Source of the DNA: Dicyema japonicum
Lineage: Eukaryota; Animalia; Dicyemida
DNA length: 64,000 bases
Assembly (NCBI GenBank): GCA_011109175.1
Contig: RDEW01000070.1
Coordinates: 62,001-126,000 of the forward strand
Reading direction: 5' to 3'
The position numbers were made by a program, and so were the translations under genes. Below are positions 1,323 to 60,830 of this stretch, piece by piece. Numbering within the stretch: position 1 is the first letter of the stretch; each line of letters begins with the position of its first letter. Below the pieces are notes generated by a model. That model was not told where the DNA came from. It worked only from the letters and a program-made list of their open reading frames with translations, and ran no database searches.

Positions 1323-1810
1323 CGAACAGCACAGCCACCTCTTATAAATATAATGAATTTTTTTAACACAAAAATTAAGTAAAGTTAAACTTTGAGAGAC
1401 AGTCTAAATACAATAGGTAATGAAATAATAAGCTGAACTATTCCATTGACTCTTTCATCACTCACTCAACTCTTAGGCAGATTCCTTAGAAAGAAAGCCT
1501 TTTATTTCTTAACCATATTCTACCTTAGTGGTATCAATTGTTTTCTGGTCCTTATTCAACTTTGTTTCGAACCTTATACGGAGGGAAAACTTTATAGTGA
1601 ATAGCCTGAATTTTACATAAAAGATAATTATAAGCATTACAGTAATTTAGTTAAATATTTTGTAAAATTACTGGTAAAATTACTTTTTTTTTAATGAGAA
1701 TTAAAATCACAATTATATTAGTTCAAAGATGAAAACGAATTTAATTAAAAAAATAAATAAATAAATATTTAATTTTATTAAATTAAATTTAATAAATTCT
1801 TAATATAAAT

Positions 1811-2532
1811 ATGAATCATTTAATAGGTCAGGTCATATTTAATTTCTTTTTAGTTCTTTTCATCAGCTTAATCGTCTTAGAAGAGGATGTGATTACTTGG
1901 GAAATAAAAAACTCTTGGAATTATACTATAGCATTGATTGAGGGTCATATATTTTTAAAACATTATTCAAATGGAACTGTAAGCAAAATTTTATTTTTAG
2001 GTTGTAATTCATAAATTCGACAGAAGTACTACGCTTGAAATGATAGCTATCAATATTACAAGTAACTCAAAAGTGAGTCAATTTTATGTCCATGGTATTT
2101 TGACCATGGGAAAGATTGAACTTATATTAAAATTTTTGGTTAAAGCTCTTACATACACAATAGAAGAAATTATAGTTATAATAAACTTTAGTAAGTATTT
2201 TAGGTTTAATTTAGATGTAATCCTATCTCGAAAGTTTAACATCACTCAGTTCTTTGACAATTCTTGTGAAACTGATGAAGTAGAGTTGATTAATAAAGGC
2301 TTTTATCTCAAACTGGAATATATAAAAGTTCAACTTTTAAGATATGATGGGTTGAATATGCCAAGTTAACTTTAACTAATCTTAGAGCTTAATTGTGACT
2401 GGACACCTATGCCCGAAGATGTTAGTGATGAGAGAAGCTAAATCTTTATAACTACTAACAGTTTCGTTCCTTCATACTAATAAATGGGTTGGGAGAATTC
2501 TAGTTTAGTTGATGTGAAGTCTCGTTGAGACT
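1811..2532 (+). CDS. Signal-peptide protein with predicted LAMP-like luminal domain, family copy 1; 3' end unresolved
   Basis: Removing GT-AG introns 1827-1853, 1979-2000, 2191-2214 and 2365-2385 joins ORFs 1811 and 2040 into one frame: MNHLIVLFISLIVL...SCETDEVELINKGFYLKLEYIKVQLLRYDGLNMPKLNCD. The C-x35-C spacing and KVQ motif resemble the LAMP C-terminal half. Confidence 0.65.
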
Positions 2533-3239
2533 AAATTTAAGTTTTTTTCTAAATTAGCTGATTATTTTCTTAGGATAAATCCTTTTTTACCTAAACCAAG
2601 TAAATTATCATAATTAAGTAAAATTTCAATCCAATTTGTTGGTAATCACTCTTCTCTAAATGAGCTGAATTATATTTAATATTATATTTAATAGAGTGTA
2701 AAGCTCGATTATTGAAATTTTGATAATTAGTTCAATCCTATTAGAAATTGTGAATACGATCCTGGGATGACTTCAAATTCGTTCTACTTGCAAAAATATT
2801 GATAACTTAATATTTCTTGGGTTAGGTTTTGTTAATTTATGTTAAAACGATTTGTTTCAAGTCATTAGAGAACTAACTACATATTTAATCTATAAAAAAT
2901 AGGTCATGTGAATTCTCTATCTAAAAACTATCTCATTTAAATTATTACTTATTAAAATTACCAGTAAATTTGCTGAGATTTATCAGTTTCTCCATTCTTG
3001 TCGTGCGTCTTATCCTTGGTAATCTACCAAAGCGTCGGACAGTGTATTTGATCTATGCTGCTAATTCAAATTGGTATAGGCACTCTCAGAGCAACAGTAT
3101 AATGCCTTGGCATATATCTTTTCAATATTCGGCTTAAGATAAAGTAACTTTCCTGTCTGGGTGGTGACATTTATGAACTTGCAAATGATAATTTTTATTT
3201 AGGAAAATATGTTACCAAAATAAAACTCGACAAAAAAGA

Positions 3240-4105
3240 CTGAGTTCATTTGCCAACATTCGCCTAGGAACTTAGAAAGTGATAAAATCACTGATGGATT
3301 ATTCTAGAAAAAATCGAAAAAAATTGAAGCAGATCGTTAATTAATTGGCTTAAATTTTTTTCAGTATTCTTGGGTTTATTAAATAATTAACTGGATATTG
3401 GAAGCAGTCGATGGAAGCAGATCACTACCCTGCTGAACTACTTGCTTACTTGATATAGCAAGAAGGAAAAAAGGATAAGATTTTAATTCTGAGAGCAATA
3501 ATTTGAGAATTTAGTGAAAACTAGGTCATGTACAAAATTCCGAATTTTTTTATGATAGCCACAGCCAAAAATCTCTTAAAGACGTAAAAGTCTCTTACTG
3601 TATAAGGAAGATCAAACACATCTCCCATATGACGCAACGATGAAGAAGTATGTTAATACTTTCTTTGAACACGGTGGACTTGAATGAGATTTCATGACAG
3701 TGTGTGTTCGGAAAATACAATTGGAGTCTAACTCTTCATTAGGAATATGAATAATAGTTAGGGAAGATAACATTTTGTCCTTTTCGAGTTTATGTGGCTC
3801 TGGATCTTTAAAATCTCTGTATTCTCTATCCACTTGACAGGAAAGATGACCTTATTGTCTTCAAAACATCCTAGTTTGTTTAAATCCGTTATACTGTCTT
3901 ACTAGTCCCCACTCGTTTAGATTTTTTAGTTCTAACTTTTCGCACCAGTGGAGCTTGAATGACCAGGCTGTTTACTCAGAGAATATCTATCGAGATACGC
4001 CTTCGAAGCCATCCAGTCTCAAGTGGATCCTTGATGACCCTTTTGATCATTGACCCGATCCGACGAACTAGATCATCCTCTAGTGAGTTTAGGATTCCTT
4101 ACGTC
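3240..4105 (-). repeat. Dispersed ~860-bp repeat ending in a CRE-like REL endonuclease C-terminus; second copy at 24466-25330
   Basis: Collinear match to 24466-25330; minus strand encodes WLRRRISIDIL-like C-terminus, followed by ~700 bp of shared sequence with no recognisable product. Confidence 0.8.
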
Positions 4106-4204
4106 TCAAAGGCATTTTGAAAAAGCTTCGGGAAGAAAAAAGTGCTCGAAGATGATTTCTGTGAAAAGAATTTAACTTTTCGAGTTCCTGCCTGTACATG
4201 CACA

Positions 4205-6038
4205 TTATTATTATTATTAGCACTTTCACGAGAGCCATAATATTTATAGCCCCGCATGTGAAGCAAAAATATATTAGTTAGGTTGCTCCAAGCTCTTCTG
4301 TTCTTTGCTAGGTCCCTCAGTGAGTCCAAATCGTCACCAGATGCCAATGTTTTCCTCACGGCTTTCAGATCGTTTTGTAGAACGACCGGGAGGGTAGTTC
4401 TCGGTCTTCCACGAAAGCGTTTTACATTGGAGGAGTAGTAATCTTCCATTGCGATGTTCGGAGGGGATATCGGGTCCAACCTCAGGACGTGTCCATAAAG
4501 TCTCCAACGAGAGCTAATGATCTCGTGGCTTAATGGTTTACAGTCACACTTATTGAACAGTCCATTCCGCGAGATCTTGGATGGCCAGGACATTCCAGTT
4601 ATGTTTCTTAGATGATTCCTGTGAAATGAGTCTAGCCTCTCCAATTCCTCTTTAGAGGTGGCCCAGGTCCCAGAGTTGTATAGTAGAATTGGTTTGATGA
4701 AAGTGTCGTATAACATAATCCTTTGTTTTATGTTATATCCTTTCCGTTTTAGCCAAAGATTTTTAAACCTTTGTAATACCGCATTTGCCAATGTTTTTCT
4801 CCGTATGATGTCTTCGCTATCTCCTAGTAGTGAGCCAAGTTTCTTTATGTGTCTCCATTTTTCTTCGAGTGAGTTTTTCATTCTTCTTGTCTCTGTCCGT
4901 TCTGTTTTTTCCCTGTTCACGGTGAGAAACCATTTCTCAAGTATATCTGGTGCTCTTTCTAGTACATGTTCCAGGAGTTTTGTTAGATAGAAGGATTTGA
5001 ATCATTCTTAGACTCGATTCGTCAATAAACCCTTCCAGCACTGTCATCAATTTTTTCCTGTTAACTGAGTCAAAGGCATTTGATAGATCTATTCCCAGAA
5101 TGTGGATGGCATTGCAATATCTTTGATGTGTTGCACATCTCCATTTGTGACTCCAGACTGCATCAGCTGTTGATCTTCCTTCTCTGAACCCACTTTGACT
5201 TTCGGGTAGGTATTCATAGGCGGGTCCTTTTATTTGTTCCAATACAATGTTAACTAAGACTTTCCGTAGAGAATTTGATAATATAATAGGTCGTAAGATT
5301 TCAACCGGTCCTTTGGGTTTATTGGGTTTTTGTATAGGTATTAGTAATCCCGTTCCCAGGGCCAAGGTTGAGTTAGTTGAAAACATTTCATTTAGTAGTG
5401 TAGCGATTTTTTCAAAAAGGGGGTCAGGCCCGTATTTCAGTAATTCTAGATTTATCGTATCTGGTCCAGGGCTTCTGTTATTTTTTAGTTTTTGACATGC
5501 TGTTTTTACTTCCAAAATTGAAATTGGTTCTTTTAAAGGTCTAGGCTTTCCTTTGAATGGGGGGATTGCTGTAGCCACATTAAAAAGTTTCTCAAAATGT
5601 GTTGCAATTACCTCCGCTTGCTCGTCAGTATTCAGTAATGTCTTGCCATTTTTGTCTTTGATGATTATTCGTTCCTTCAGGTTTTAGTGGCGTAGTAAAC
5701 GAGCGGCCATATACATTTGTGAGTTATCCTTTAGTTTGGATACTTCATTGATTTTGCGAAGAAGTTCTTCTTGGTGAAGTGTCTTGTTCAGTTTCCTGAT
5801 TTTTCTACGGATTTGGTCCCTCAACTCCTGAAGGACTTTTCTCATGTTATAGTCTTTTTCGATTAGTTTTTTTTGTATGGATTTCCTTTAACTCCTTTGC
5901 TAATTCCTTTACTAGTTCTGTATGTGTCGTCAGACCCTTACTGGCCATCTCCCGCGTGCCGAGGTACTGGCCTGCTGCATCGTTTATTATATACTTCGTG
6001 TGATCCCACGAAATTCCTACTGTTTGGTCCTTCAGATA
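4205..6038 (-). mobile_element. 5'-truncated RTE LINE with 22-bp TSD and (AAT)n tail; RT motifs 4-5 deleted
   Basis: ORFs 4937-5578 (RT0-3) and 4099-4920 (RT6-7 plus C-terminus). TSD agttcctgcctgtacatgcaca at 4183-4204 and 6039-6060. No QGD or YADD motif at the ~4985 junction. Confidence 0.93.
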
Positions 6039-18399: not shown

Positions 18400-19000
18400 C
18401 ATCCAGGTCGTCTGTTGTCACCAATTTACGACTGATTGTTTCGTAATCATTTTTTAATAAAATTTGAAGTGTATTATTGGTCTGCCTTGAAATCCGTGAC
18501 TTCCGGCGCAGTAGAAAAATTCTTCCATTATCCTGTTACAGGGCGTAGTCGAGTCCAGTCTAATAATATATCCAAATAGTTGCCATCTCAATAGAAAAAC
18601 GTCAATGCTAATTGGTGTTGATTTACATATAGCATATAGATTCTCGATTGAAATTTTTCTTGGCCAGAAGATTCCAGTCAATTTGCGCAGTTGGCTTCTG
18701 TAGAAAGTATTTAGCCTATCTAAATCTTTTTTTGAGGTTCACCATGTTCTGGAATTGTATATCAGTATTGGCTTGATAAACGTGTCGTATAGTCTGACAC
18801 AAAGTTTCAGAGACACATGCCTATTTCTTATCCGGATATTGAACATTTTTTGAAGTACATGGTAGCCAGCATTTTCCTTTAATAAATATCTTCGGCGTTA
18901 CCTAGTAGTGAGCCGAGTTTTTTTTTGTATGTCTCCAGAGTTGTTCATTTCTTGACTTGACTGGTAGTCCATTTTTGCAATGTTTATGTGCAGGTTCCAT
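18400..19000 (-). mobile_element. RTE fragment (RT7 and C-terminus)
   Basis: KKLGSLLGNAEDI..WPRKISIENLY..RWQLFGYIIRL..QGRP. Confidence 0.8.
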
Positions 19001-19019
19001 TTATTTAAAATTCAACCCA

Positions 19020-19600
19020 CTTTATTTAACCAATAATAAAATGTTAATATTTAATAATCAACAACCTTCCTCGTCTGCCTGTTCGCCAGCCTCCTCAGAC
19101 AGGTTCGATTCTGGTTGCTGAAACAACTCCGAGAGCGCCTTGTCCAATTGAACCCTCTGCGCATATGGTATCTCCGGGCTCTGCCTCCTATACTTCAGTG
19201 TCAGGCTTTCTAGGGTCAGCTATAATACAGTAGACTGTAAATAGGCCTGGAGCTTCCTATCTACCCCCAACTGCTTCAGATATCCCTTGTGGTACTTTGT
19301 TGCAATTTCCCACGTCATTACTATTGGAACAACAAGAACCTTGCAACCAAACATCTGCCCCATCTCTTTTGCAAGCAAGTCATAATTCCTTTTTTTCTCC
19401 ACCTCCACAGTCTCAAACGGTCTTGAGATGTAGTACCAACCTCTTTGATAGGGACTTGGTCAGACTCCTCATCGTGTACTACAATGTACGGTTTATGTGC
19501 TTGACTAGCACCGAAGAACGGATAACACTGTTTACCTTAATTTGGACCCTGGTGTTCTTTACTACAGATTGCACCTTATGAGTCTGCAAAGGCGGCTCAA
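19020..19600 (-). mobile_element. R4/Dong-like REL-endonuclease retroelement, 3' fragment
   Basis: EVEKKRNYDLLAKEMG..VPIVMTWEIATKYHKGYLKQLGVDRKLQAYLQSTVL; homologous to 59985-60830. Confidence 0.8.
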
Positions 19601-19768
19601 TGGCTCCAAACAGAGAAAAAAAGCAGTGGAGACATGCTATCTCCCTGTAGAATTCCCCTCTTGAGTTTTATTTTGCCTATCCGATCATTTATTTAAAATA
19701 CTTTTATTTTTTCTTAATAATTAAATATTTAATTTTTTATTAATTTTTAATAAATTCTTAATATAAAT

Positions 19769-20310
19769 ATAAATCATTTAATAGGTCAGGTCATATTTAA
19801 TTTCTTTTTAGTTCTTCATAAGCTTCATCGTCTTACATATCAAAGTGATAACTTGTAAATACAAAGAAAATAATAATACTATAGCAGTGATGATGGGTTC
19901 AATATCCGTTAAATATTATGTACATCGAGGAGTAAGCAAAATTTTATTTTTAGCAAATAATTTATAATTTCGACATAAGTGCTTCGTTTGAACTTTTGAA
20001 AGTCCATGATTCAAATGACACAATGAATTATGATATCTATGCTTATTTGACCATGGAGGAGTATCAAATTTTATTTAAAGTTTCGACTACACGTTATTCA
20101 TACACAATACATGAAATTGTAGTTACAATAGGTTCTGGTAAGTATTTTATGTTTAATTTAGATGTGTTCCTTGTTAGGAATATTTCAAATAACTCAGTGG
20201 TTTGACGACTATTGTGAATGTGATCTAAAGAGGGCGAAACAAAGTTTCTAAATTGTATAAATTCAAATTTACATTAATGAGAGGTTATGAGTCGACAAAG
20301 ACAAGTTAAC
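19769..20310 (+). pseudogene. LAMP-like family copy 2 (start ATG>ATA, frameshift, stops)
   Basis: Collinear with 1811-2385, with the same introns. Confidence 0.75.
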
Positions 20311-21821
20311 TTTAAAAAATTTTCGTTATATTAAAAGTGAATTGCAGTGTTTTTGAAGATATTCTATCTATACTGGAAATTACCACCACTGTAGAATGTT
20401 CAATTTTTGTATTTCTGGTAAACTGTAGGCAAAATTTTCATCAATAAAGCTTAAACTTTTTCGGAATGATTTAAATTTTCGTTATATTGAAAGTGGATTG
20501 AATTGCGGTGATGTTTGGAGATATTGTATTCAATTCAATATAAAGAGAAGCCACGAAGATTCCACTCTAGATTCCACTTGTCTTGTGTTTACTTAGTATA
20601 AGATTGTTAAAATATGAATAGTACATTGTAGACTTGATTTAATTTATTAAGTTTCCTTTTCATAAAGATTACGGGACTAATCCATCTCTGGGCTTAGAAA
20701 AGTTTGAACTCCCATACAATGATCCTGTGACTGTCGTTTCAAATTTTTCAAAACAATTTTGTCAATGTTCAAAATAGTGAAAGTTCTGTGACGAAAATCC
20801 ATTCTATAAACTTCGAATAGTTAATTGTGATTAGCTTTCAATCTGTGAAATAATTGATCAATTTTTTGAAGTTGATGGAAGCTGTCAAAGTTTCACCAAT
20901 AGCTCTGTTTAATCTATGGCTTGCGACATATTATTCTTGAAAATAATCATACACATAAAAAGACAAATCAATTTGGGATAAAAAATAGTCTGAAAGAAAA
21001 ATATAGCCAGAGAATATAAACAGGGATAAATCAGGTAGTGAAAAATAATCCATATTCATAGGTTACCAAAATGTAAAACATATATTAGACATTTTGATAA
21101 AAACCTTCAACACTATATGATTTATCCGATAATATAATCTTCAAGAAATCGAATGATAATACAATACAATAGATACTAAAAAATACAATGACATAAAAAA
21201 GCTACCGACCACAAGAACGTGGCGACGTCATTCCTAATAATATGACAATGTATTAAAAGGTTCGCCATATTGCAAAAATATTTTTGGAAATAAATAAGTA
21301 TTAAATTAAAATAAATTAATCCAAATTGACTAATTTAATTTATAAATCTAACTATAATTTATGTTCTGGGTGGGGCCATCTAGTGCTATGTGGATAATTG
21401 GCTGAAGATTTCTATTTGTTTTGTCTCTTCCCCCTCTTTCCCTTCATATTAGAGTCGCATCATGTGAAGGAATCTTTGAGAGTCTACAGCGAAGAAGTTA
21501 TGCATGTCCACGTTTGTTGGGTGTTTCAAGTCAATTCTCACTACTCCATATAGTTTTCGTGATTTTGCTTTAGATCTCCCAGTGGTGTTAAAACTATTTT
21601 TAGTGTCTTCGTGGTTTTTTGAGATTATAATTTAGTTTTAATTTAAAGTAATTTATTACAAAACAATTAAAAATAGCCAAGCTGAAATAATTGAGTGGCT
21701 GTATTCCCTGACAATTACGAGAGAAATCCTTTGAAGCAGCCACTCTGTTTTCAAACGCTCGTTACTTTAGAAATATTTAATTACTAAAATATTGAACTTT
21801 ATTTGAATTATTTAATAAATA

Positions 21822-22870
21822 CAATAATATTGAACATTTTTTGAAGTACATGGTAGCCAGCATTTTCCTTTAATAATTATTTTCGGCGTTACCTAGTAGT
21901 GAGCCGAGTTTTTTTTTGTATGCAAGTCATAATTCCTTTTTTTTCTCCATCCACAGTCTCAAACGGTCTTGAGATGTAGTACCAACCTCTATGATAGGGA
22001 CTTGATCAGACTCCTCATCGTGTACCACAATGTACGGTTTTTGTGCTTGACTAGCACCGAAGAACGGATAACACTGTTTACCTTAATTTGGACCCTGGTG
22101 TTCTTTACTACAGATTGCACCTTATGAGTCTGCAAAGGCGGCTCAATGGCTCCAAACAGAGAACAAAAAGCAGTGGAGACATGCTATCTCCCTGTAGAAT
22201 TCCCCTCTTGAGTTTTATTTTGCCTATCCGATCATTTATTTAAAATACTTTTATTTTTTCTTAATAATTAAATATTTAATTTTTTATTAATTTTTTAATA
22301 AATTCTTAATATAAATATAAATCATTTAATAGGTCAGGTCATATTTAATTTCTTTTTAGTTCTTTTCATAAGCTTCATCGTCTTAGATATCAAAGTGATA
22401 ACTTGGAACTTCAAAGAAAATAATAGTACTATAGCAGTGATGATGGGTTCAATATCAATTAAATATTATGTACATCGAGGAGTAAGCAAAATTTTATTTT
22501 TAGCAAATAATTTGTAAATTCGGCAAAAGTGCTTCGTTTGAACTTTTGAGAGTCTATTATTCAAATGAAACAATGAATTATGATATTTATGCTTATTTGA
22601 CCATGTAGGAGTATCAAATTTTATTTAAAGTTTCGACTACACGTTATTCATACGCAATACATGAAATCGTAGTTACAAACGGTTCTGGTAAGTATTTTAT
22701 GTTTAATTTAGATGTATTCCTTGTTGGAAATTTTCAAATGACTCAGTGGTTTGACAAATATTGTGAATGTGATCTAATAGTTTTGAAAGAGAGCGAATCT
22801 AATTTTCTCAAATTGTATCAATTCAAATTTATATTAATTATGGGTTATAAGCCGAATGATGCAAGTTAAC
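21822..22870 (+). repeat. Local segmental duplicate of ~18830-20310 lacking ~18933-19374
   Basis: High identity through the RTE piece, R4-like piece, AT island and LAMP-like gene; the deletion junction at ~21922 fuses the RTE and R4-like fragments. Confidence 0.9.
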
Positions 22871-23030
22871 TATAACTAATCTTAGAGCATGAGTGTGACT
22901 GTAGACCTAAGGCCAAAGATGATAGGGAGAAAAGCTAAATCTTAATTACTACTAACAGTTTCGTTCCTTCATACTCATAAATGGGTTGGGAGAATTCTAG
23001 TTTAGTTGATGTGAAGTCTCGTTGAGACTA
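22317..23030 (+). pseudogene. LAMP-like family copy 3 (start ATG>ATA, one in-frame TAG)
   Basis: Frame otherwise intact: NHLIVLFISFIVLDIKVITW..YLTM*EYQILFKV..TQWFDKYCECD..KHECDC; same four introns as copy 1. Confidence 0.75.
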
Positions 23031-23181
23031 CATCTATGTTTTTTTCTAAATCTCAATACTAATTTCAAAAACTTTCCACTTTAATCATTTTAGGCACTAA
23101 TTCAAGATCCCAGAGATCCCGGAGATAGAGAACAATGGGAGACAGACAACGTGGGTAAAAATCGTTTAAGCGATATCAGAA

Positions 23182-24420
23182 GAACAGCAGAAACGTCGTT
23201 TAACCGAATTGAGAATACATGCACATGAATGCGGAATCACTAGAACACCATATCAGTCGGTTGACTGAATTAAGAACACATGCACATCAATGCGAGATGA
23301 AGAATAAGCAGAACAGCATATCAGTTGGTTAACTGAATTGAGAACACATGCACATCAATGCGGCAGACGAATCAGTAGAACACCATATCAGTCGGTTAAC
23401 TGAATTGAGAACACATGCACACCAATGCGGGCAGACGAATCAGTAGAACACCATATCAGTCGGTTGACTGAATTGAGAACACATGCACATCAATGCGGGA
23501 TGAAGAATAAGCAGAACACCATATCAGTCGGTTAACTGAATTGAGGACACATGCATCAATGCGGGCAGACGAATCAGAAGAACAGCAGAAACGTCGTTTA
23601 ACCGAATTGAGAATATACGGGATGAAGAATAACTAGAACACCATATCAGTCGGTTGACTGAATTGAGAACACATGCACATCAATGCGGGATGAAGAATAA
23701 GCAGAACAGCATATCAGTTGGTTAACTGAATTGAGAACACATGCACATCAATGCGGGATGAAGAATAAGCAGAACAGCATATCAGTTGGTTAACTGAATT
23801 GAGAACACATGCACATCAATGCGGGCAGACGAATAGTAGAACACCATATCAGTCGGTTAACTGAATTGAGAACACTTGCACATCAATGCGGGATGAAGAA
23901 TAAGCAGAACACCATATCAGTCGGTTACTGAATTGAGAACGCATGCACACCAATGCGGGCAGACGAATCAGTAGAACACCATATCAGTCGGTTAACTGAA
24001 TTGAGAACGCATGCACACAATGCGGGCAGACGAATCACTAGAACACCATATCAGTCGGTTGACTGAATTGAGAACGCATGCACACAATGCGGGAGACGAA
24101 TCAGTAGAACACCATATCAGTCGGTTACTGTTGAGAACGCATGCACACCAATGCGGGCAGACGAATCAGTAGAACACCATATCAGTCGGTTGACTGAATT
24201 GAGAACACATGCACAACAATGCGGGATGAAGAATAAGCAGAACAGCATATCAGTTGGTTAACTGAATTGAGAACACATGCACATCAATGCGGGCAGACGA
24301 ATCAGTAGAACACAATATCAGTCGGTTAACTAAATTGAGAACACATACCCAATAAGTCCAGGCTGTTCAAGACACAGAAGAGACTCAGCGTCGTTTGTCT
24401 AATAATTGAAGCACGCGACA
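23182..24420 (+). repeat. Tandem array of 18 units of ~68 bp derived from a 23-aa STPR-like coding repeat
   Basis: Unit gaacaccatatcagtcggttgactgaattgagaacacatgcacatcaatgcggg plus a variable 14-nt end. Adding one A gives ESVEHHISRLTELRTHAHQMRAD. A further degenerate unit (DTEETQRRLS) lies at 24360-24420. Confidence 0.9.
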
Positions 24421-25149
24421 AGCTCTCCACAGATGCTAGACCATGTGCACGCGGAACGTGCTCTGACCGAGTTCATTTCCTAACATTCGCAGAACTTAGG
24501 AAGTGATAGGATCACTGATGGATTATTCTAGAAAATAATTGAAAAAAATTTGAAGTTAGGATCTTTTAATTAATTGGCATAGATTTTTTTACGTATTCTT
24601 AAGTTTATTAAATAATTAACTGGATATTGGAAGTTGTCATGGAAGCTGATCACTACCGTGCTGAACTGCTTGGCTTGCTTAAGCAGAAAGGAAAAAAGGA
24701 TAAGATTTTAATTCTGAGAGCAATAATTTGAGAATTTAGCGAAAACTATGTCAAGTGCAAATTTCGAATATTTTATGATAACCACAGCCAATAATCTCTT
24801 AAAGAATCAAAGGCCTCTTACTGTTTATGGAAGATCAAACATATCTCTCATATGACGCAACGATGAAGAATATGTTAATACTTTCTTTGAACTCTGGATT
24901 TGAATGAATTTCATGACAGTGTGTTCGTGGAAACTACAATTTGAGTCTAACTCTTCATTAGGCACATAAATAATAGTTAAGGAAGATAACATTTTGTCCT
25001 TTTCGCTTCCTTGTGACTCTGGATCCTTGAAATCTCTGTATATCTATGCATTTTACTAGGAAGATAACTTTTTATATTCGGAACATCCTAGTTTTTTTAA
25101 TCCGTTATACAGCCTTACCAGTCCCCGTTTTTTAGATCTTTTTTACTAA

Positions 25150-25860
25150 CTTTTTGCACCTGTGTGCTTGAATGGCCAGGCTGTTTCCTCAGAGAATATC
25201 TATCGAGATACGCTTTCGAAGCCATCCAGTCTCATGTTTATCCTTGATGACCATTTTGATCATTGAGCCCATCCGACGGACTATACCATCCTCTTGAGGG
25301 CCAAGGATTACAGACGTCTCAACAGCAAATGTGATAAACAGATGATCTTCCAAAATGTTTCGGTATTTTGTTTCTTTTCTTATCCTCGGCTTGCTTAGAA
25401 GCATAATTGGTTCCTAAGAATCAGGTATTCAAAAGGAGTTGTTGAGGAACATTAGGTTATTTTCGAAAAGTTCATCACTCCGTCACTCTTAACCCCATTT
25501 TATGGATAGCTTTAATGTCCTGGCATTTATTTATTACCTCCTCAGTATCAACTGGTTGGAGACAAAATATATAGTCCCCAACTAAGTAATTTCAGTTCCA
25601 CAGTCATTGTGAAACGCATTCATCTCTGGCATCACGTCTTACATATTTTCCATTGTGGGAACCCCATTAGTGGAGTAGATAAAGCAAGAGCTTTTTTATG
25701 CTCACCAGACATTCTTTTATCAGGTAGACCATATGAAGATTTTTTTAAAAATCAAAAAGGCATAGAGCAGAAGAGAATCCTTTGGTTAAGTAGGTAGCAG
25801 TATGGAAACTGAACTCACTGCTAATCACAACAGCAATAATCTCAACGTCATCTGGTAATT
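25150..25860 (-). mobile_element. Decayed CRE-like element (RT remnant to REL endonuclease)
   Basis: ETKYRNILEDHLFITFAVETSVILGP..WLRKRISIDIL (ORF 25189-25404). Confidence 0.7.
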
Positions 25861-28884: not shown

Positions 28885-29202
28885 ATAATAATAATAATAA
28901 GCCTTTTCACGAGAGCCATAGTATTTTATAGCTCCGCATAGGCAGGACACACACTTTATTTAAGTAAAGAACAGTTAATTTTAACTAATCGTAGAACCAA
29001 GAATGATATTCACTTCTTTTTTTCTTTTTTGTGGGGTGTCCTTTCTGACAATCCAGTTCCAGTGAGTATTCACTGATGACGGCGTCACTCGTCAAACCAT
29101 TTCTGCCGTAGATGCGTGAACCTTCCACCAGGTGAACAGCAGCGAGATTCGAACCCATAGCCTAAGCCACTTAAGCCCGAACCTAACCACTAAGCCACCC
29201 GG
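28885..29202 (-). mobile_element. Full-length tRNA-derived SINE (family A) with RTE-type 3' tail
   Basis: A box TGGCTTAGTGG (29197-29187), B box GGTTCGAATC (29155-29146), tail atggctctcgtgaaa shared with RTE 4205-6038, (TTA)n end, TSD atagcacttcta at 28873-28884 and 29203-29214. Confidence 0.92.
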
Positions 29203-49439: not shown

Positions 49440-51630
49440 AATATTATTTATTAACTATGGGTGAGAGCGGCTGCTGACATCACGGAGTAAGCGTTTCCGC
49501 GAATAACAGCGATACCAATTTTTTGCCTCAGCCAGACCGCTTCCCGCACGTCTTTCTTGCGGTGGGCCAATTTTCCCCCGATTTCCTTTAGGAAAGAGGC
49601 TGTAATACTTCCAGCCGCACCAGACGTCTCGATTGCTATCGGTACAAAACGGTAGCGGTCTCCAATTTCGCCATATTTTTTAATCTTGATTTTTCGGCCA
49701 GATCGGCTGCCGATCCAGCAGACTGCGCCGAGCTGAGCATCATCGAGTTCGAGAAAGAATCCACAACAGTGCAGTCCCATACGAGCGATTTTCCCTCAGT
49801 GAACGGAAAGACAGTTAACCCATCCGGTCTTTTCCCATCTCCGCGGTCCAATCCCACAGGTTCCAATACTGCCGGGAAGCCTGCCGCTTCAAGAGCTCGC
49901 AAGACAATGTTGTTCATAGCAGCATGGCGGGGTGCTCTGCCCGCACTCCTTTTGCACGAGAGCGGGTGCAGCCCTTTGGCATCGACGATCCCTCCACAGC
50001 GACATTGGTGTTCGACGCAAACATCAGCTCCCAGGCGTTGTGCGATTCCAATCCGAATACAGTCATCGTCCAATAGGGTCCCCAGGGAGGAAGACGGGAG
50101 TGCATCCAGCCACGCTCCGCTCCCATGGTTGGCGGCGGACACGAGGCATGCAAGACGATGCTGGTTGGCCTCAGACTTTAGCACGTCGAAGATATTCTTG
50201 GAGTAAATATCATCCCAGTCACGTTGCCTCGAAGGATCGTTCGGCATATCCAAACCAGTTTCACACCATTCGCAACGAGCTTCGTCGAAGACTTTTTCCC
50301 AAGAGAGTCCGGTTGTAATACGTAGGATTTCTTGGACCAAAAGGCTTCCACTTGAGAGCGATGACACATATGCTGGATAGGCGATCTCCAGCGCCGACCT
50401 GAGACCCGTTCCTCCGAGGCGTGTAGGAAGCTTGCATTGGTTCCAACTCGGCGCATCAAACTGGATGTTTAGAAGTAATTCAGCTGATTTTCTCAATGTC
50501 CTATCCAGTGACAGGAGGATGTCACGATGTTTGAAGCAGGGAGAACATCGGAGAGCATATAGGAGTTTGGGCAAGCCGATGCTATTCTTCAAAAGGAAAA
50601 CGCTGTATGACCATCGAGTAAGGAAAGTTTCTCCGTGACTCTGGAGAGTTCATCCTCTTTTGTTTGTAGATGGCTCCGCAGTTCCTTTTCGTCAAGTGGG
50701 CACCCAAGAAAGTATGTCCGCTCCCTGGGTACGACAGTAATTCCAGGTAATACCGAGTTGAAAGACTCGACCACGTTGATGAAATCACTCTCCGAGTATG
50801 TGATATTTATTAGCTCCGATTTCTTTATGTTTATCTCAAGTCCGAGGTTTCGTAGTGCTGGCACGGCATGTGACAGAACGTCGTGTACTTTTCTCCACGG
50901 CCCTCCAATTGTGGCGTCATCAAGATACCAAAGGTTAAGTTGTGTGTTTATAGAGCGGACAATTTCATCGATGGCCAGAGCGAAGAGTAGTGGACCAAGT
51001 GGGTCTCCTTGTTGAACTCCGGTCTCCGAACAGATAATCTTGTCCCCGAAAACCAGTGAAGAATTTGTTCCGTAAGCGAGGAAGACAAGTGGAATAAGTT
51101 CCGGGGCTCGTTTGCTTGTAGTTTCGAAAATTTGATCCCTCCTCAATGAATTGAAGGCATTGCAGATGTCCAGCTTGACCCCAATGTGTGGGTTTTGTTC
51201 GTCATTCTGTCCAAAAAAACACCTCGCAGCATGCACTGCCGCCTCGCATCCGTTCCTTACACCAACCCCCAGTTGGAGGGGGAAAATTCTTCAGATATTC
51301 TCGGAGAGACAATGCTGCATGCAATTTTCGCTGTCAATCTTCTGAAATAGTTGCCGACTGCGATGGGGCGGACCCCACCTTCAGGTTTTTTGAAGGCCAA
51401 TAAATGTGCACTGAAGAGGAGCTCCCTTGCTTGGGGAGGAATATCTCCGTTCAAAATACGCATAACCAGTTTTGTAATTGATTTGACGAGGTTGCAGCCA
51501 GCTTCTGCAGTAGCCTCCGCCGTAAGATCTTTGATGTGACCCGGCCGCAAGCCATCGATGCCTCCACTGCTACTCGCCGCAAAGGACGAAATGCCGCGTC
51601 GCACTTCGCCTTCGGTGACGGTCATCCTTG
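49440..51630 (-). mobile_element. 5'-truncated CRE-like element (subfamily 1): RT, CCHC and REL endonuclease, nearly intact
   Basis: KLDICNAFNS, GVQQGDPLGPLLF, WYLDDATIG, DGKRPDGLT and WLRQKIGIAVIRGN in four ORFs separated by apparent single-base shifts. Confidence 0.95.
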
Positions 51631-59984: not shown

Positions 59985-60830
59985 TAATCTCACTTTATTT
60001 AACCAACAATAAAAAGTTAATATTTAATAATCAACAACCTTCTGTTCGGCAGCCTCCTTAGGCAAGTTCGATTCTGGTTGCTGAAACAACTCGAGAGCTC
60101 CTTGTCCAATTGCCTTTTATACTCCAGTGTCAGGCTCTCTAAGGTCTGCTTTAGTACAGTGGACTGTAGATAGGCCTGAAGCTTCCTATCTACCCCCAAC
60201 TATTTCAGATAACCCTTGTGGTACTTTGTTGCAATTCCTTACTATTGGAATTGGAATAACGAGGACCTAGCAACCAAGCATCTGCCCCATCTCGTTTGCA
60301 AGAATGTCATACTTCCTCTTTTTCTCCACCTCGTTTGCAAGCAGATCTTGAGACATAATGCCAACCTCTATGATAAGGACTTGGCCAGACTCCTTATCGT
60401 GTACCACAATATCCGGTTTATTCTGCTTGACTAGCACCGAGGTACGGATAACACTGTCTACCTTAATTTGAACCCTGGTGTTCTCTACTACAGATTGCAC
60501 CTTATGAGTCCGAATACCATACTTATTGCATAGTAGAAGATGAAGACTCCTTACTACCTCGTTATGCTTCCACACATACTCGTGTAGAGCATCGATCCGC
60601 ACCAAGTGGCTAAATGATCAACCGACATGCTCCTTGACTTACAATGGGGACATGTATTTGTTGATCGACCCCAAAAAATATTGCGGTTTTGCATATACGT
60701 GTACAGCGCTCCAATCGAGTGAGTTGTCACCGTATTTTAGCCATATTGTCGACGACTTAAGGTCGACATGCGGGTTGTCCAATGCTCTGAAGAGGACCTT
60801 ATGAAGGCTTTTTGACAAGCCTTATTATTA
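59985..60830 (-). mobile_element. R4/Dong-like retroelement 3' part (CCHC and REL endonuclease)
   Basis: NRNIFWG..CPHC..VDHLATWC..HNEVVRSLHLLL..NKPDIVVHDK..IEVG..EKKRKYDILANEMG. Confidence 0.85.

What the first reader, a model, noticed from the sequence alone, without database searches (positions are those of the whole stretch)
1811..2532. Hypervariable surface-protein family: introns conserved, exons diversified
Seen: copy 1 (1811) and copy 3 (22317) have near-identical introns (27/27, 22/22, 23/24 and 20/21 nt), start region and signal peptide. The mature exons differ at most residues (EEDVITWEIKNSWNYTIALIEGHIFLKHYSNGT vs DIKVITWNFKENNSTIAVMMGSISIKYYVHRG). Where the amino acid is shared, the codon is almost always identical. 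Established: that pattern (dN>>dS, introns slower than exons) marks diversifying selection in host-interaction and antigen gene families. Inference: this is an uncharacterised variant surface-antigen or host-recognition family of a parasite.
Basis: partly seen in the sequence, partly recalled or inferred. Interest (0 to 1): 0.85.

Follow-up and report, generated by a model that had tools for sequence, protein, structure and literature searches.

The report
Fast-evolving secreted protein genes, frozen introns
A tiny-intron parasite genome (probably the octopus parasite Dicyema japonicum) holds one intact and two dead copies of an orphan secreted-protein gene; the part coding for the mature protein changes about four times faster at amino-acid-changing sites than at silent sites, while the signal peptide, micro-introns and untranslated ends stay almost identical, as in venom genes.

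Summary
Three + strand copies exist: c1 (1811-2441), c2 (19769-20325) and c3 (22317-22938). Between c1 and c3 the four 21-27 nt introns match at 92/94 bases and the 3' UTR at 98/104. The exons match at only 61-73%, and the proteins at 36%.

A pairwise maximum-likelihood codon model on the mature region gives dN 0.80, dS 0.19 and omega 4.2 (p = 2e-4). None of 120 null simulations reached that omega, and it survived every trimming I tried. Silent and third-codon sites are about four times more diverged than introns plus UTR.

The switch from conserved to variable lies at the predicted signal-peptide cleavage point and at the stop codon. That points to selection on the mature protein.

- Only c1 is intact. 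c2 and c3 have ATA instead of ATG. c3 has an in-frame TAG. c2 has several frameshifts and lacks its 3' end.
- No membrane anchor is present, so the protein looks secreted, not surface-bound.
- The likely host, a cephalopod, has no antibody immunity.
- No homologue turned up among 1.84 billion representative proteins, and there is no Pfam match.

This is a new, orphan member of the known "accelerated evolution" kind (venom PLA2, three-finger toxins, conotoxins). The scan noted similar patterns on other DNA of this genome, but not at this locus.

The parts
1756..1810 (+). Copy 1: conserved AT-rich promoter-proximal / 5' leader block. The last 25 nt are identical to copies 2 and 3.
   Evidence: Homology of c1 to c3 begins at 1756/22263; alignment A1.
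1811..1826 (+). Copy 1 exon 1, with the ATG and the first 5 codons of the signal peptide.
   Evidence: Spliced model gives an open 178-codon frame. 15/16 identical to c3; the one difference is ATG v ATA.
1827..1853 (+). Copy 1 intron 1, 27 nt, GT-AG, phase 1. It is in frame and stop-free, so it could also be read through as signal-peptide coding sequence.
   Evidence: 27/27 identical in all three copies. ORF 1811-2014 reads through it.
1854..1978 (+). Copy 1 exon 2. The first ~26 nt code for the rest of the signal peptide and are conserved. The rest codes for mature protein and is diverged.
   Evidence: Divergence starts at codon 15.
1979..2000 (+). Copy 1 intron 2, 22 nt, GT-AG, phase 0.
   Evidence: 22/22 identical in all three copies.
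2001..2190 (+). Copy 1 exon 3, mature protein.
   Evidence: 68.9% identical to c3.
2191..2214 (+). Copy 1 intron 3, 24 nt, GT-AG, phase 1.
   Evidence: 23/24 against c2 and c3.
2215..2364 (+). Copy 1 exon 4, mature protein, with the first conserved cysteine.
   Evidence: 74% identical to c3. Cys128 aligns with c3 Cys125.
2365..2385 (+). Copy 1 intron 4, 21 nt, GT-AG, phase 1.
   Evidence: 20/21 against c3.
2386..2441 (+). Copy 1 exon 5 coding part, with the second conserved cysteine. The tail is hydrophilic. Stop codon TAA at 2439-2441.
2442..2554 (+). Copy 1 conserved 3' UTR block, containing AATAAA.
   Evidence: 98/104 identical to c3. Homology ends at 2554/23051. No unusual RNA fold, z = 0.55.
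19716..20325 (+). Copy 2, a decayed pseudogene. ATA at 19769-19771 in place of ATG. A 2-bp deletion in exon 2. Indels of +1, -10 and -1 in exon 4. Intron 4 degenerate. No homology beyond it.
22263..23051 (+). Copy 3, a recently inactivated copy. ATA at 22317-22319 and an in-frame TAG at 22606-22608. Otherwise the frame is kept and all indels against c1 are multiples of three. Stop codon at 22936-22938.
19367..19715 (+). Upstream flank shared by the c2/c3 tandem duplication (partner 21914-22262). It includes a TE fragment. I used it as a near-neutral yardstick.
   Evidence: Block 19367-20323 v 21914-22883 is 92.6% identical. About 4 substitutions and 2 homopolymer indels in ~400 nt of flank.

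Best explanation
This is a lineage-specific (orphan) gene family of a tiny-intron animal, most likely the dicyemid Dicyema japonicum. It encodes a small secreted protein of about 160 mature residues. The protein has a hydrophobic N-terminal signal, four N-glycosylation sequons, two conserved cysteines and no membrane anchor.

The window holds one intact gene (c1) and a 2.5-kb-spaced tandem pair of dead copies (c2, c3).

Shown: after duplication, the segment coding for the mature protein accumulated amino-acid replacements about four times faster than silent changes. The changes are spread evenly as point substitutions and in-frame indels. The promoter-proximal block, signal peptide, micro-introns and 3' UTR stayed nearly identical.

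Inferred: this is positive diversifying selection on an extracellular protein that contacts a changing partner, such as host renal epithelium or innate recognition molecules, or possibly conspecific recognition. The non-coding parts stay the same because the copies are fairly young and because those parts are needed for expression and micro-intron splicing. Redundant copies are lost by pseudogenisation, in a birth-and-death pattern.
For: Gene model:
- c1 gives an open 178-codon frame across four GT-AG introns of 27, 22, 24 and 21 nt.
- c3 keeps the same frame apart from one TAG, and all its indels are multiples of three.

Selection:
- GY94 maximum-likelihood fit gives omega 4.16, dS 0.19, dN 0.80 and LRT 13.7.
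- 0 of 120 simulations under omega = 1 reached the observed omega.
- Omega is 3.9 after trimming around gaps, 5.5 without the worst-aligned patch, and 6.1 and 3.2 in the two halves. All give p < 0.02.
- Codon position 1 is the most diverged: 82, 56 and 50 differences at positions 1, 2 and 3.

Boundaries:
- Divergence begins at codon 15, right after the hydrophobic signal and inside exon 2. This holds for c1-c3 and for c2-c3.
- Divergence stops at the stop codon.
- So the variable unit is the mature protein, not 'the exons'.

Non-coding conservation: introns differ at 2/94 and the 3' UTR at 6/104.

Spread: mismatches are evenly distributed, with dispersion 0.9 v 0.75 and P = 0.18.

Protein features: the only hydrophobic segment is N-terminal, there are 4 sequons per copy, and 2 cysteines align.

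Orphan status: no Pfam match, no word-based hit, and 0 HMMER hits in 1.84 billion representatives.

Precedent for the same pattern: three-finger toxins (PMC2474615) and conotoxins (PMC10561478).
Against: - There are only three copies, giving one effectively independent long comparison. No site or branch models were possible.
- Two of the three copies are dead and share the ATA. Yet their mature exons differ at 43/462 positions, against 6/585 for flank, exon 1 and introns 1-3 together. That is awkward for pure selection unless their 5' part was recently homogenised.
- dS (0.18-0.19) is about four times the intron/UTR divergence (0.04). 'Young duplicates' alone therefore does not explain the frozen non-coding parts.
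- c1 and c3 share no alignable flank beyond the transcription unit, which leaves their age unknown.
- There is no expression, splicing or localisation evidence.
- The signal peptide is judged by hydrophobicity only.
- The structure model is unusable, with pLDDT 41.
- The organism was not identified directly.
Confidence: 0.55

Rival explanations
1. A mutational process aimed at the mature-protein coding segment (a 'targeted mutator', as once proposed for conopeptides) raises substitution and indel rates there. It spares the signal peptide, introns and UTRs. Selection only filters the result.
For: - Silent and third-position divergence is about 4 times that of introns plus UTR in c1-c3.
- In the start-less pair c2/c3, mature exons carry 43 substitutions plus 4 indels in 462 nt. 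Flank, exon 1 and introns 1-3 carry 6 substitutions plus 2 indels in 585 nt (p = 1e-10).
- The c2-c3 changes fall almost evenly on the three codon positions (14, 11, 18) and include frameshifts, which selection cannot favour.
- A mutator has been proposed for conotoxins (PMC10561478).
Against: - No known mechanism could recognise a signal-peptide cleavage point inside an exon.
- Omega of about 4 cannot come from mutation alone.
- Kappa of 1.7 shows no deaminase-like spectrum.
- c2-c3 divergence rises from 5' to 3' (0%, 6%, 8%, 15%, and 24% in intron 4) and includes intron 4. That fits a regional history, such as 5' gene conversion or a chimeric 3' end, better than an exon-specific process.
- The counts are small.
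Confidence: 0.12
2. Exon segments are swapped in from other, unseen family members. This would be cassette exchange, gene conversion or ASSET-like segment switching. The conserved introns and ends serve as homology anchors, so the exon differences are imported rather than accumulated in place.
For: - The pattern of conserved introns and signal peptide with unrelated-looking exon segments is what was described for viperid three-finger toxin genes (PMC2474615; PMC2711939).
- c2 loses all homology after intron 4, so rearrangement does occur here.
- The scan's notes report larger clusters of fast-evolving, mostly broken glycoprotein genes elsewhere in this genome (unchecked).
Against: - Mismatches between c1 and c3 are evenly spread point differences, not blocks.
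- Divergence runs right up to the splice junctions. Homology-dependent exchange with 21-27 nt anchors would hardly allow that.
- At c2/c3 differing sites, c1 agrees with c2 17 times, with c3 12 times and with neither 13 times. There are no runs.
Confidence: 0.08
3. One reading: a variant surface-antigen repertoire used to evade host immunity.
For: Omega > 1, glycosylation sequons, several copies, and a probable parasite genome.
Against: - There is no TM or GPI signal and the C-terminus is hydrophilic.
- Only one of the three copies is intact.
- The likely host is a cephalopod: LINE relatives are cephalopod proteins, and GC and repeat content fit D. japonicum. Cephalopods have no antibody-based immunity (my own knowledge).
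- No evidence exists for switching or exclusive expression.
Confidence: 0.08
4. Nothing adaptive is going on. This is a decaying pseudogene family under relaxed constraint, and the contrast comes from alignment artefacts and AT-rich composition.
For: Two of the three copies are broken. The exon alignment contains gaps and one poorly aligned patch.
Against: - Relaxed constraint gives omega of 1 at most. The observed 4.2 exceeded all 120 simulations run with the same composition, and it survives trimming.
- c1 keeps 178 open codons in DNA that is 63% A+T. By my estimate from base composition the chance of that is about 4e-6.
- c3 has one stop where random sequence would give about 12, by the same estimate.
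Confidence: 0.04

Closest known systems
Accelerated evolution of snake-venom gene families: Crotalinae PLA2 isozymes (Nakashima et al. 1993, recalled from memory, paper not held) and viperid three-finger toxins (PMC2474615, PMC2711939)
   Same: - Nearly identical signal peptides.
- Introns and UTRs more conserved than the mature-protein exons.
- Mature proteins only ~30-60% identical.
- The cysteine scaffold is kept.
- dN is at or above dS.
- As I recall for PLA2, intron divergence is about a quarter of silent-site divergence, the same ratio as here (0.04 v 0.18-0.19).
   Different: - The protein is an orphan with no venom context.
- The organism is a ~30-cell parasite without glands.
- The introns are only 21-27 nt, so the conserved islands are tiny.
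- Changes are evenly spread point substitutions, not the block 'segment switches' (ASSET) described for 3FTx.
- Only three copies were seen, and two are dead.
Conotoxin gene superfamilies
   Same: The signal sequence is conserved within a superfamily. The mature peptide is hypervariable, with accelerated and mostly non-synonymous substitution. A raised silent rate in the mature region prompted mutator hypotheses (PMC10561478).
   Different: - Conotoxin genes have long, TE-rich introns and a propeptide.
- Here the introns are micro-introns and no propeptide is evident.
- The mature protein is about 160 residues with two cysteines, not a small disulfide-rich peptide.
Fast-evolving LAMP-like membrane glycoprotein gene cluster noted elsewhere in this genome (scan note s1-390221), and the neighbouring minus-strand gene at 9535-8669 (s1-393302)
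   Same: - Small glycosylated extracellular domain.
- Signal peptide split by a phase-1 micro-intron after 5-6 codons.
- Intron phases 1, 0, 1 are shared with the 9535-8669 gene.
- Many broken copies amid TEs.
   Different: - No sequence similarity by BLASTP or profile comparison.
- No Pfam Lamp match.
- Copies 1-3 lack the S/T stalk, TM segment and basic tail.
- The fold could not be tested (pLDDT 41).

Membership tests
Accelerated-evolution secreted multigene family (venom PLA2 / 3FTx / conotoxin type; an evolutionary mode, not a homology family) | Signal peptide conserved among paralogs | tested here: met
   The first 14 codons carry 3 nucleotide differences, of which 1 changes a residue besides ATG/ATA. 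Divergence starts at codon 15.
Accelerated-evolution secreted multigene family (venom PLA2 / 3FTx / conotoxin type; an evolutionary mode, not a homology family) | Introns and UTRs more conserved than the mature-protein exons | tested here: met
   Introns 92/94 and 3' UTR 98/104 identical, against exons 367/504; p = 7e-14.
Accelerated-evolution secreted multigene family (venom PLA2 / 3FTx / conotoxin type; an evolutionary mode, not a homology family) | dN/dS at or above 1 in the mature region | tested here: met
   Omega 4.16 with LRT p = 2e-4; 0 of 120 null simulations reached it; 3.2-6.1 in subsets. This is pairwise only.
Accelerated-evolution secreted multigene family (venom PLA2 / 3FTx / conotoxin type; an evolutionary mode, not a homology family) | Structural scaffold (cysteines) kept while the surface changes | tested here: inconclusive
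   Two cysteines align (c1 C128/C164 with c3 C125/C162). The fold model is too poor to map surface against core.
Accelerated-evolution secreted multigene family (venom PLA2 / 3FTx / conotoxin type; an evolutionary mode, not a homology family) | Expressed and secreted product acting on another organism's molecules | not testable with these tools
   No RNA or protein data are reachable. The gene is absent from the protein collections.
Variant surface antigen repertoires (VSG, var/PfEMP1, Giardia VSP type) | Membrane attachment (GPI signal or TM segment) | tested here: not met
   The only hydrophobic 19-residue window is at the N-terminus. The last 25 residues have mean hydropathy -1.1 (c1) and -2.1 (c3). 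No conserved downstream exon exists.
Variant surface antigen repertoires (VSG, var/PfEMP1, Giardia VSP type) | Large repertoire of intact alternative genes | tested here: inconclusive
   Three copies lie in 64 kb and one is intact.
Variant surface antigen repertoires (VSG, var/PfEMP1, Giardia VSP type) | Switching or mutually exclusive expression under host adaptive immunity | not testable with these tools
   No expression data. The probable host group, cephalopods, lacks adaptive immunity (my own knowledge).
LAMP domain family (Pfam PF01299) | Sequence match to the Lamp profile | tested here: not met
   No Pfam family at E <= 10 for the c1 or c3 pieces, other than chance-level hits.
LAMP domain family (Pfam PF01299) | Beta-prism LAMP fold | tested here: inconclusive
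   The AlphaFold2 model of exons 3-4 is all-beta but has pLDDT 41. I ran no fold search because the model is unreliable.

The most novel reading that the evidence does not exclude
A mutational process confined to the mature-protein coding segment, sparing signal peptide, micro-introns, UTRs and flanks, operates in this genome. It also acts on copies that can no longer be translated. The two start-less copies c2 and c3 differ about seven times more, frameshifts included, in their mature exons than in about 585 nt of flank, exon 1 and introns. Silent sites of c1-c3 are about four times more diverged than introns and UTR.
Probability: 0.1. Interest if true: 0.85.

Novelty: new member of a known kind. 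Interest (0 to 1): 0.5.

Why it matters
Dicyemids are among the simplest animals, with about 30 cells, and live only in cephalopod kidneys. Almost nothing is known about the molecules they use at the host interface.

A secreted orphan protein with whole-domain omega of about 4 is a concrete candidate for such a molecule. It also shows that the 'venom-gene' mode of evolution, with frozen signal peptide, introns and UTRs and a racing mature protein, occurs in a glandless micro-parasite with 21-27 nt introns.

The micro-introns make the contrast unusually sharp. Islands of 22 nt with 100% identity sit between exons with 27-39% mismatch.

If many paralogs exist, the family could help with an old question left open for venom PLA2 genes and conotoxins. 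Is the excess of silent change over intron change due to constrained introns or to a targeted mutator? The dead copies here offer a natural control.

Tried and rejected
- **Homologue searches.** Word-indexed searches with the exon 1-2 ORF and with the exon 3-4 read-through piece found nothing. A HMMER profile of the copies against 1.84 billion representatives gave 0 hits. Pfam gave nothing. Exact-ORF look-ups gave nothing. So no further paralogs or transcripts could be fetched, and site models were impossible.
- **Structure.** An AlphaFold2 model of the contiguous exon 3-intron 3-exon 4 piece, with a 4-row alignment, gave pLDDT 41. I ran no fold search on it. The full spliced protein has no reference and I did not type it into a tool, so it was not folded.
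- **'Distant fourth paralog' at 9535-8669 (-).** There is no similarity by BLASTP or hhalign. Only the intron phases agree. I rejected it as a demonstrated family member.
- **Neutral yardstick for c1-c3.** The same TE fragment lies downstream of both copies (3238-4109 and 24465-25322, 84.5% identical). The spacers do not align, so these may be independent insertions. I did not use it.
- **Conserved 3' UTR as a structured RNA.** Folding gave z = 0.55, and Rfam gave no hit in the window.
- **Intron 4 derived from a SINE tail.** The 19/21 match at 28974-28994 covers only 23 nt, with E = 0.02 within the window. I treat it as chance.
- **Block-wise segment switching.** Rejected on the dispersion test.
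- **Ciliate-type genetic code, with TAG read as sense.** Rejected. c1 and c3 both end at the same TAA, and the genome is animal-like.
- **Myxozoan origin, the other animal group with introns under 30 nt (PMC13644364).** Less likely. The nearest named LINE RT relatives are cephalopod proteins, and GC of 37.2% with a heavy repeat load fits D. japonicum. It is not formally excluded.

Full report
**What is there.** A BLASTN of 1700-2600 against the window finds three + strand copies. They lie at 1756-2554 (c1), 19716-20224 and beyond (c2), and 22263-23051 (c3). A three-way alignment shows the same four GT-AG micro-introns in each.

Splicing c1 at introns of 27, 22, 24 and 21 nt gives an open frame of 178 codons from the ATG at 1811 to the TAA at 2439-2441. 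The same model applied to c3 keeps the frame throughout, and every indel against c1 is a multiple of three. However, c3 reads ATA where c1 has ATG, and it has one in-frame TAG at 22606-22608.

c2 shares the ATA. It also has a 2-bp deletion in exon 2, indels of +1, -10 and -1 in exon 4, and a degenerate intron 4. It has no homology beyond that point. So the window holds one intact gene and two dead copies.

The 27-nt first 'intron' is in frame and free of stops. It may instead be signal-peptide coding sequence.

**Checking the observation.** The 3' UTR block is 98/104 identical and the 25 nt before the start are identical. Exons are 367/504 identical in a nucleotide alignment and 61% identical in the codon alignment. 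The proteins are 36% identical.

| Comparison, c1 v c3 | Mismatches | Test |
|---|---|---|
| Introns v exons | 2/94 v 137/504 | Fisher p = 1e-9 |
| Introns + 3' UTR v exons | 8/198 v 137/504 | Fisher p = 7e-14 |

None of the four introns has another match within three mismatches in the 64 kb window. The only exceptions are the paralogs and one 19/21 match in a SINE tail. Shuffled sequence gives none.

**Is it selection?** Nei-Gojobori counts for the mature region give dN 0.63, dS 0.27 and omega 2.3. Codon position 1 is the most diverged. I wrote a pairwise Goldman-Yang maximum-likelihood model with F3x4 frequencies. It gives omega 4.16, kappa 1.7, dS 0.19 and dN 0.80, with LRT 13.7 against omega = 1 (p = 2e-4).

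In a parametric bootstrap under omega = 1, the largest omega in 120 replicates was 2.2. The result holds under every variation tried:

| Variation | Omega |
|---|---|
| Other codon-frequency models and gap penalties | 3.5-4.6 |
| Codons within 5 of a gap dropped | 3.9 |
| Worst-aligned patch dropped | 5.5 |
| First half | 6.1 |
| Second half | 3.2 |

All the subset tests give p < 0.02. Relaxed constraint cannot produce this.

Mismatches are spread evenly, with an index of dispersion of 0.9 against 0.75 under permutation (P = 0.18). The divergence therefore consists of point substitutions plus small in-frame indels, not swapped blocks.

**Where the boundary lies.** The change from conserved to variable is not only at splice sites. 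Inside exon 2, the part coding for the hydrophobic signal is conserved. The first divergent codon is codon 15, the first residue after the hydrophobic stretch. This holds both for c1-c3 and for c2-c3. At the other end, divergence stops at the stop codon.

The variable unit is thus the mature protein. That argues for selection acting at the protein level rather than a process that recognises exons.

**Introns against silent sites.** Non-coding transcribed parts differ at 8/198 positions, or about 0.04. Several measures of silent-site divergence are higher:
- Silent sites at codons with the same amino acid: 5 differences over 28.3 sites, or 0.18 (Poisson p = 0.006).
- Third positions of codons with identical first two positions: 10/56 (Fisher p = 0.0013 against 8/198).
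- The model-based dS: 0.19.

So introns and UTR are about four times less diverged than silent sites. Either the non-coding parts are constrained or the coding part mutates faster.

A generic tiny-intron constraint is an unlikely full explanation, for three reasons:
- The four introns do not resemble one another.
- They have no look-alikes in the window.
- A 2026 survey found the splice signals of D. japonicum and myxobolids reduced to 'GTa...AG', and it notes that introns at conserved positions in different animal species show little or no sequence similarity (PMC13644364).

It cannot be excluded without a genome-wide calibration. One unchecked scan note reports near-identical 22-nt introns in unrelated genes.

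**The dead pair.** c2 and c3 sit in a tandem duplication, 19367-20323 against 21914-22883.

| c2 v c3 segment | Differences |
|---|---|
| Shared upstream flank (~500 nt, partly TE-derived) | about 6 substitutions, 2 homopolymer indels |
| Exon 1 and introns 1-3 | 0/89 |
| Mature exons | 43/462 substitutions, 4 indels |

The exon excess gives p = 1e-10. Of 36 differing codons, 32 change the amino acid. The changes fall about equally on the three codon positions and on both lineages.

Both copies lack ATG, so this exon excess is the least well explained observation. Three readings remain.
- Both copies were alive while diverging, and a recent gene conversion of about 380 nt spread the ATA and erased neutral differences. 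That tract would run from -320 to the end of the signal peptide, and it contains no substitutions while the 100 nt further upstream has four.
- Divergence is regional, rising from 5' to 3' (0, 6, 8, 15% in successive segments and 24% in intron 4). On this view c2's 3' part has a different history.
- The mature region has a raised mutation rate.

The counts are too small to decide.

**What the protein is.**
- The only hydrophobic segment is N-terminal.
- The C-terminus is hydrophilic.
- Each copy has four N-x-S/T sequons.
- Two cysteines align between c1 and c3.
- No conserved downstream exon exists that could supply a TM segment.

I read this as a secreted glycoprotein, not a surface-anchored one. 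It has no Pfam match and no word-index relatives. A HMMER profile found no hit in 1.84 billion representatives.

The AlphaFold2 model of exons 3-4 is all-beta but unreliable (pLDDT 41), so I ran no fold search.

It shows no sequence similarity to c1-c3.

**Organism.** Earlier agents of this scan named Dicyema japonicum. I did not verify that directly. Several observations are consistent with it:
- Introns of 21-27 nt occur among animals only in myxobolids and D. japonicum (PMC13644364).
- The window has 37.2% GC and is full of LINE fragments. D. japonicum has 36.7% GC and 49% repeats rich in LINEs (PMC6736024).
- The nearest named relatives of a LINE RT in the window are cephalopod proteins, at 44-47% identity. 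Cephalopods are the host group of dicyemids.

**Comparison with known systems.** Conserved signal peptide, introns and UTRs around a racing mature-protein region is the classic 'accelerated evolution' pattern. It is known from snake-venom PLA2 genes (my recollection of Nakashima et al. 1993; the paper is not held). It is also known from viperid three-finger toxins (PMC2474615; PMC2711939) and from conotoxins. For conotoxins, a raised substitution rate in the mature region led to mutator proposals (PMC10561478).

The present case works like these. It is not homologous to any of them, and it differs in three ways:
- The introns are micro-introns.
- The divergence is diffuse rather than block-wise.
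- The setting is a glandless micro-parasite.

The scan's notes list similar patterns on other DNA of this genome: s1-406380, s1-390221, s1-343638 and s1-319460. They do not cover this locus, and I could not check them.

**Verdict.**
- Diversifying selection on the mature protein is supported by one robust pairwise test.
- 'Surface antigen repertoire' is not supported.
- This is a new, orphan member of a known evolutionary kind.
- The open question is why silent sites, and the exons of dead copies, outrun introns and flanks.

Noticed in passing
window 50589-51236 (-), also 4937-5578 (-): These are LINE reverse-transcriptase ORFs (Pfam RVT_1). The best named relatives of the first are cephalopod proteins (Octopus sinensis, Acanthosepion pharaonis) at 44-47% identity. 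Cephalopods are the host group of dicyemids. This could reflect host-parasite LINE transfer or database bias. No near-identical self hit appeared, so this genome's proteins are not in the collection.
   Followed up: no
window 9535-8669 (-): This gene has a signal peptide split by a 25-nt phase-1 intron, a 24-nt second intron, an S/T-rich stalk, a TM segment and a KKK tail. No GT-AG choice for its last intron (8939-8916, or extending to 8901) brings the TM exon into frame. It is either a frameshifted copy or uses a non-canonical splice. It has the same intron phases as copies 1-3 but no sequence similarity.
   Followed up: partly
window 28974-28994: A 19/21 match to intron 4 of copy 1 lies in the tail region of the SINE at about 28885-29202. 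The E-value is 0.02 within the window, so it is probably chance.
   Followed up: partly
window 3238-4109 and 24465-25322: The same repeat fragment (84.5% identical, same orientation) lies downstream of copy 1 and of copy 3. The spacers between gene and fragment do not align. These are either independent insertions or a rearranged old duplication.
   Followed up: partly
window 23175-24346: A 68-bp satellite with about 17 units and 87% matches starts 124 nt after the end of copy 3.
   Followed up: no
window 18836-19584 and 21827-22130; also 59991-60510: A TE fragment lies upstream of copies 2 and 3. It is longer at copy 2 (19018-19584) than at copy 3 (21915-22130), and a third copy lies at 59991-60510. 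The tandem duplication carried it along, with a later deletion or insertion.
   Followed up: partly
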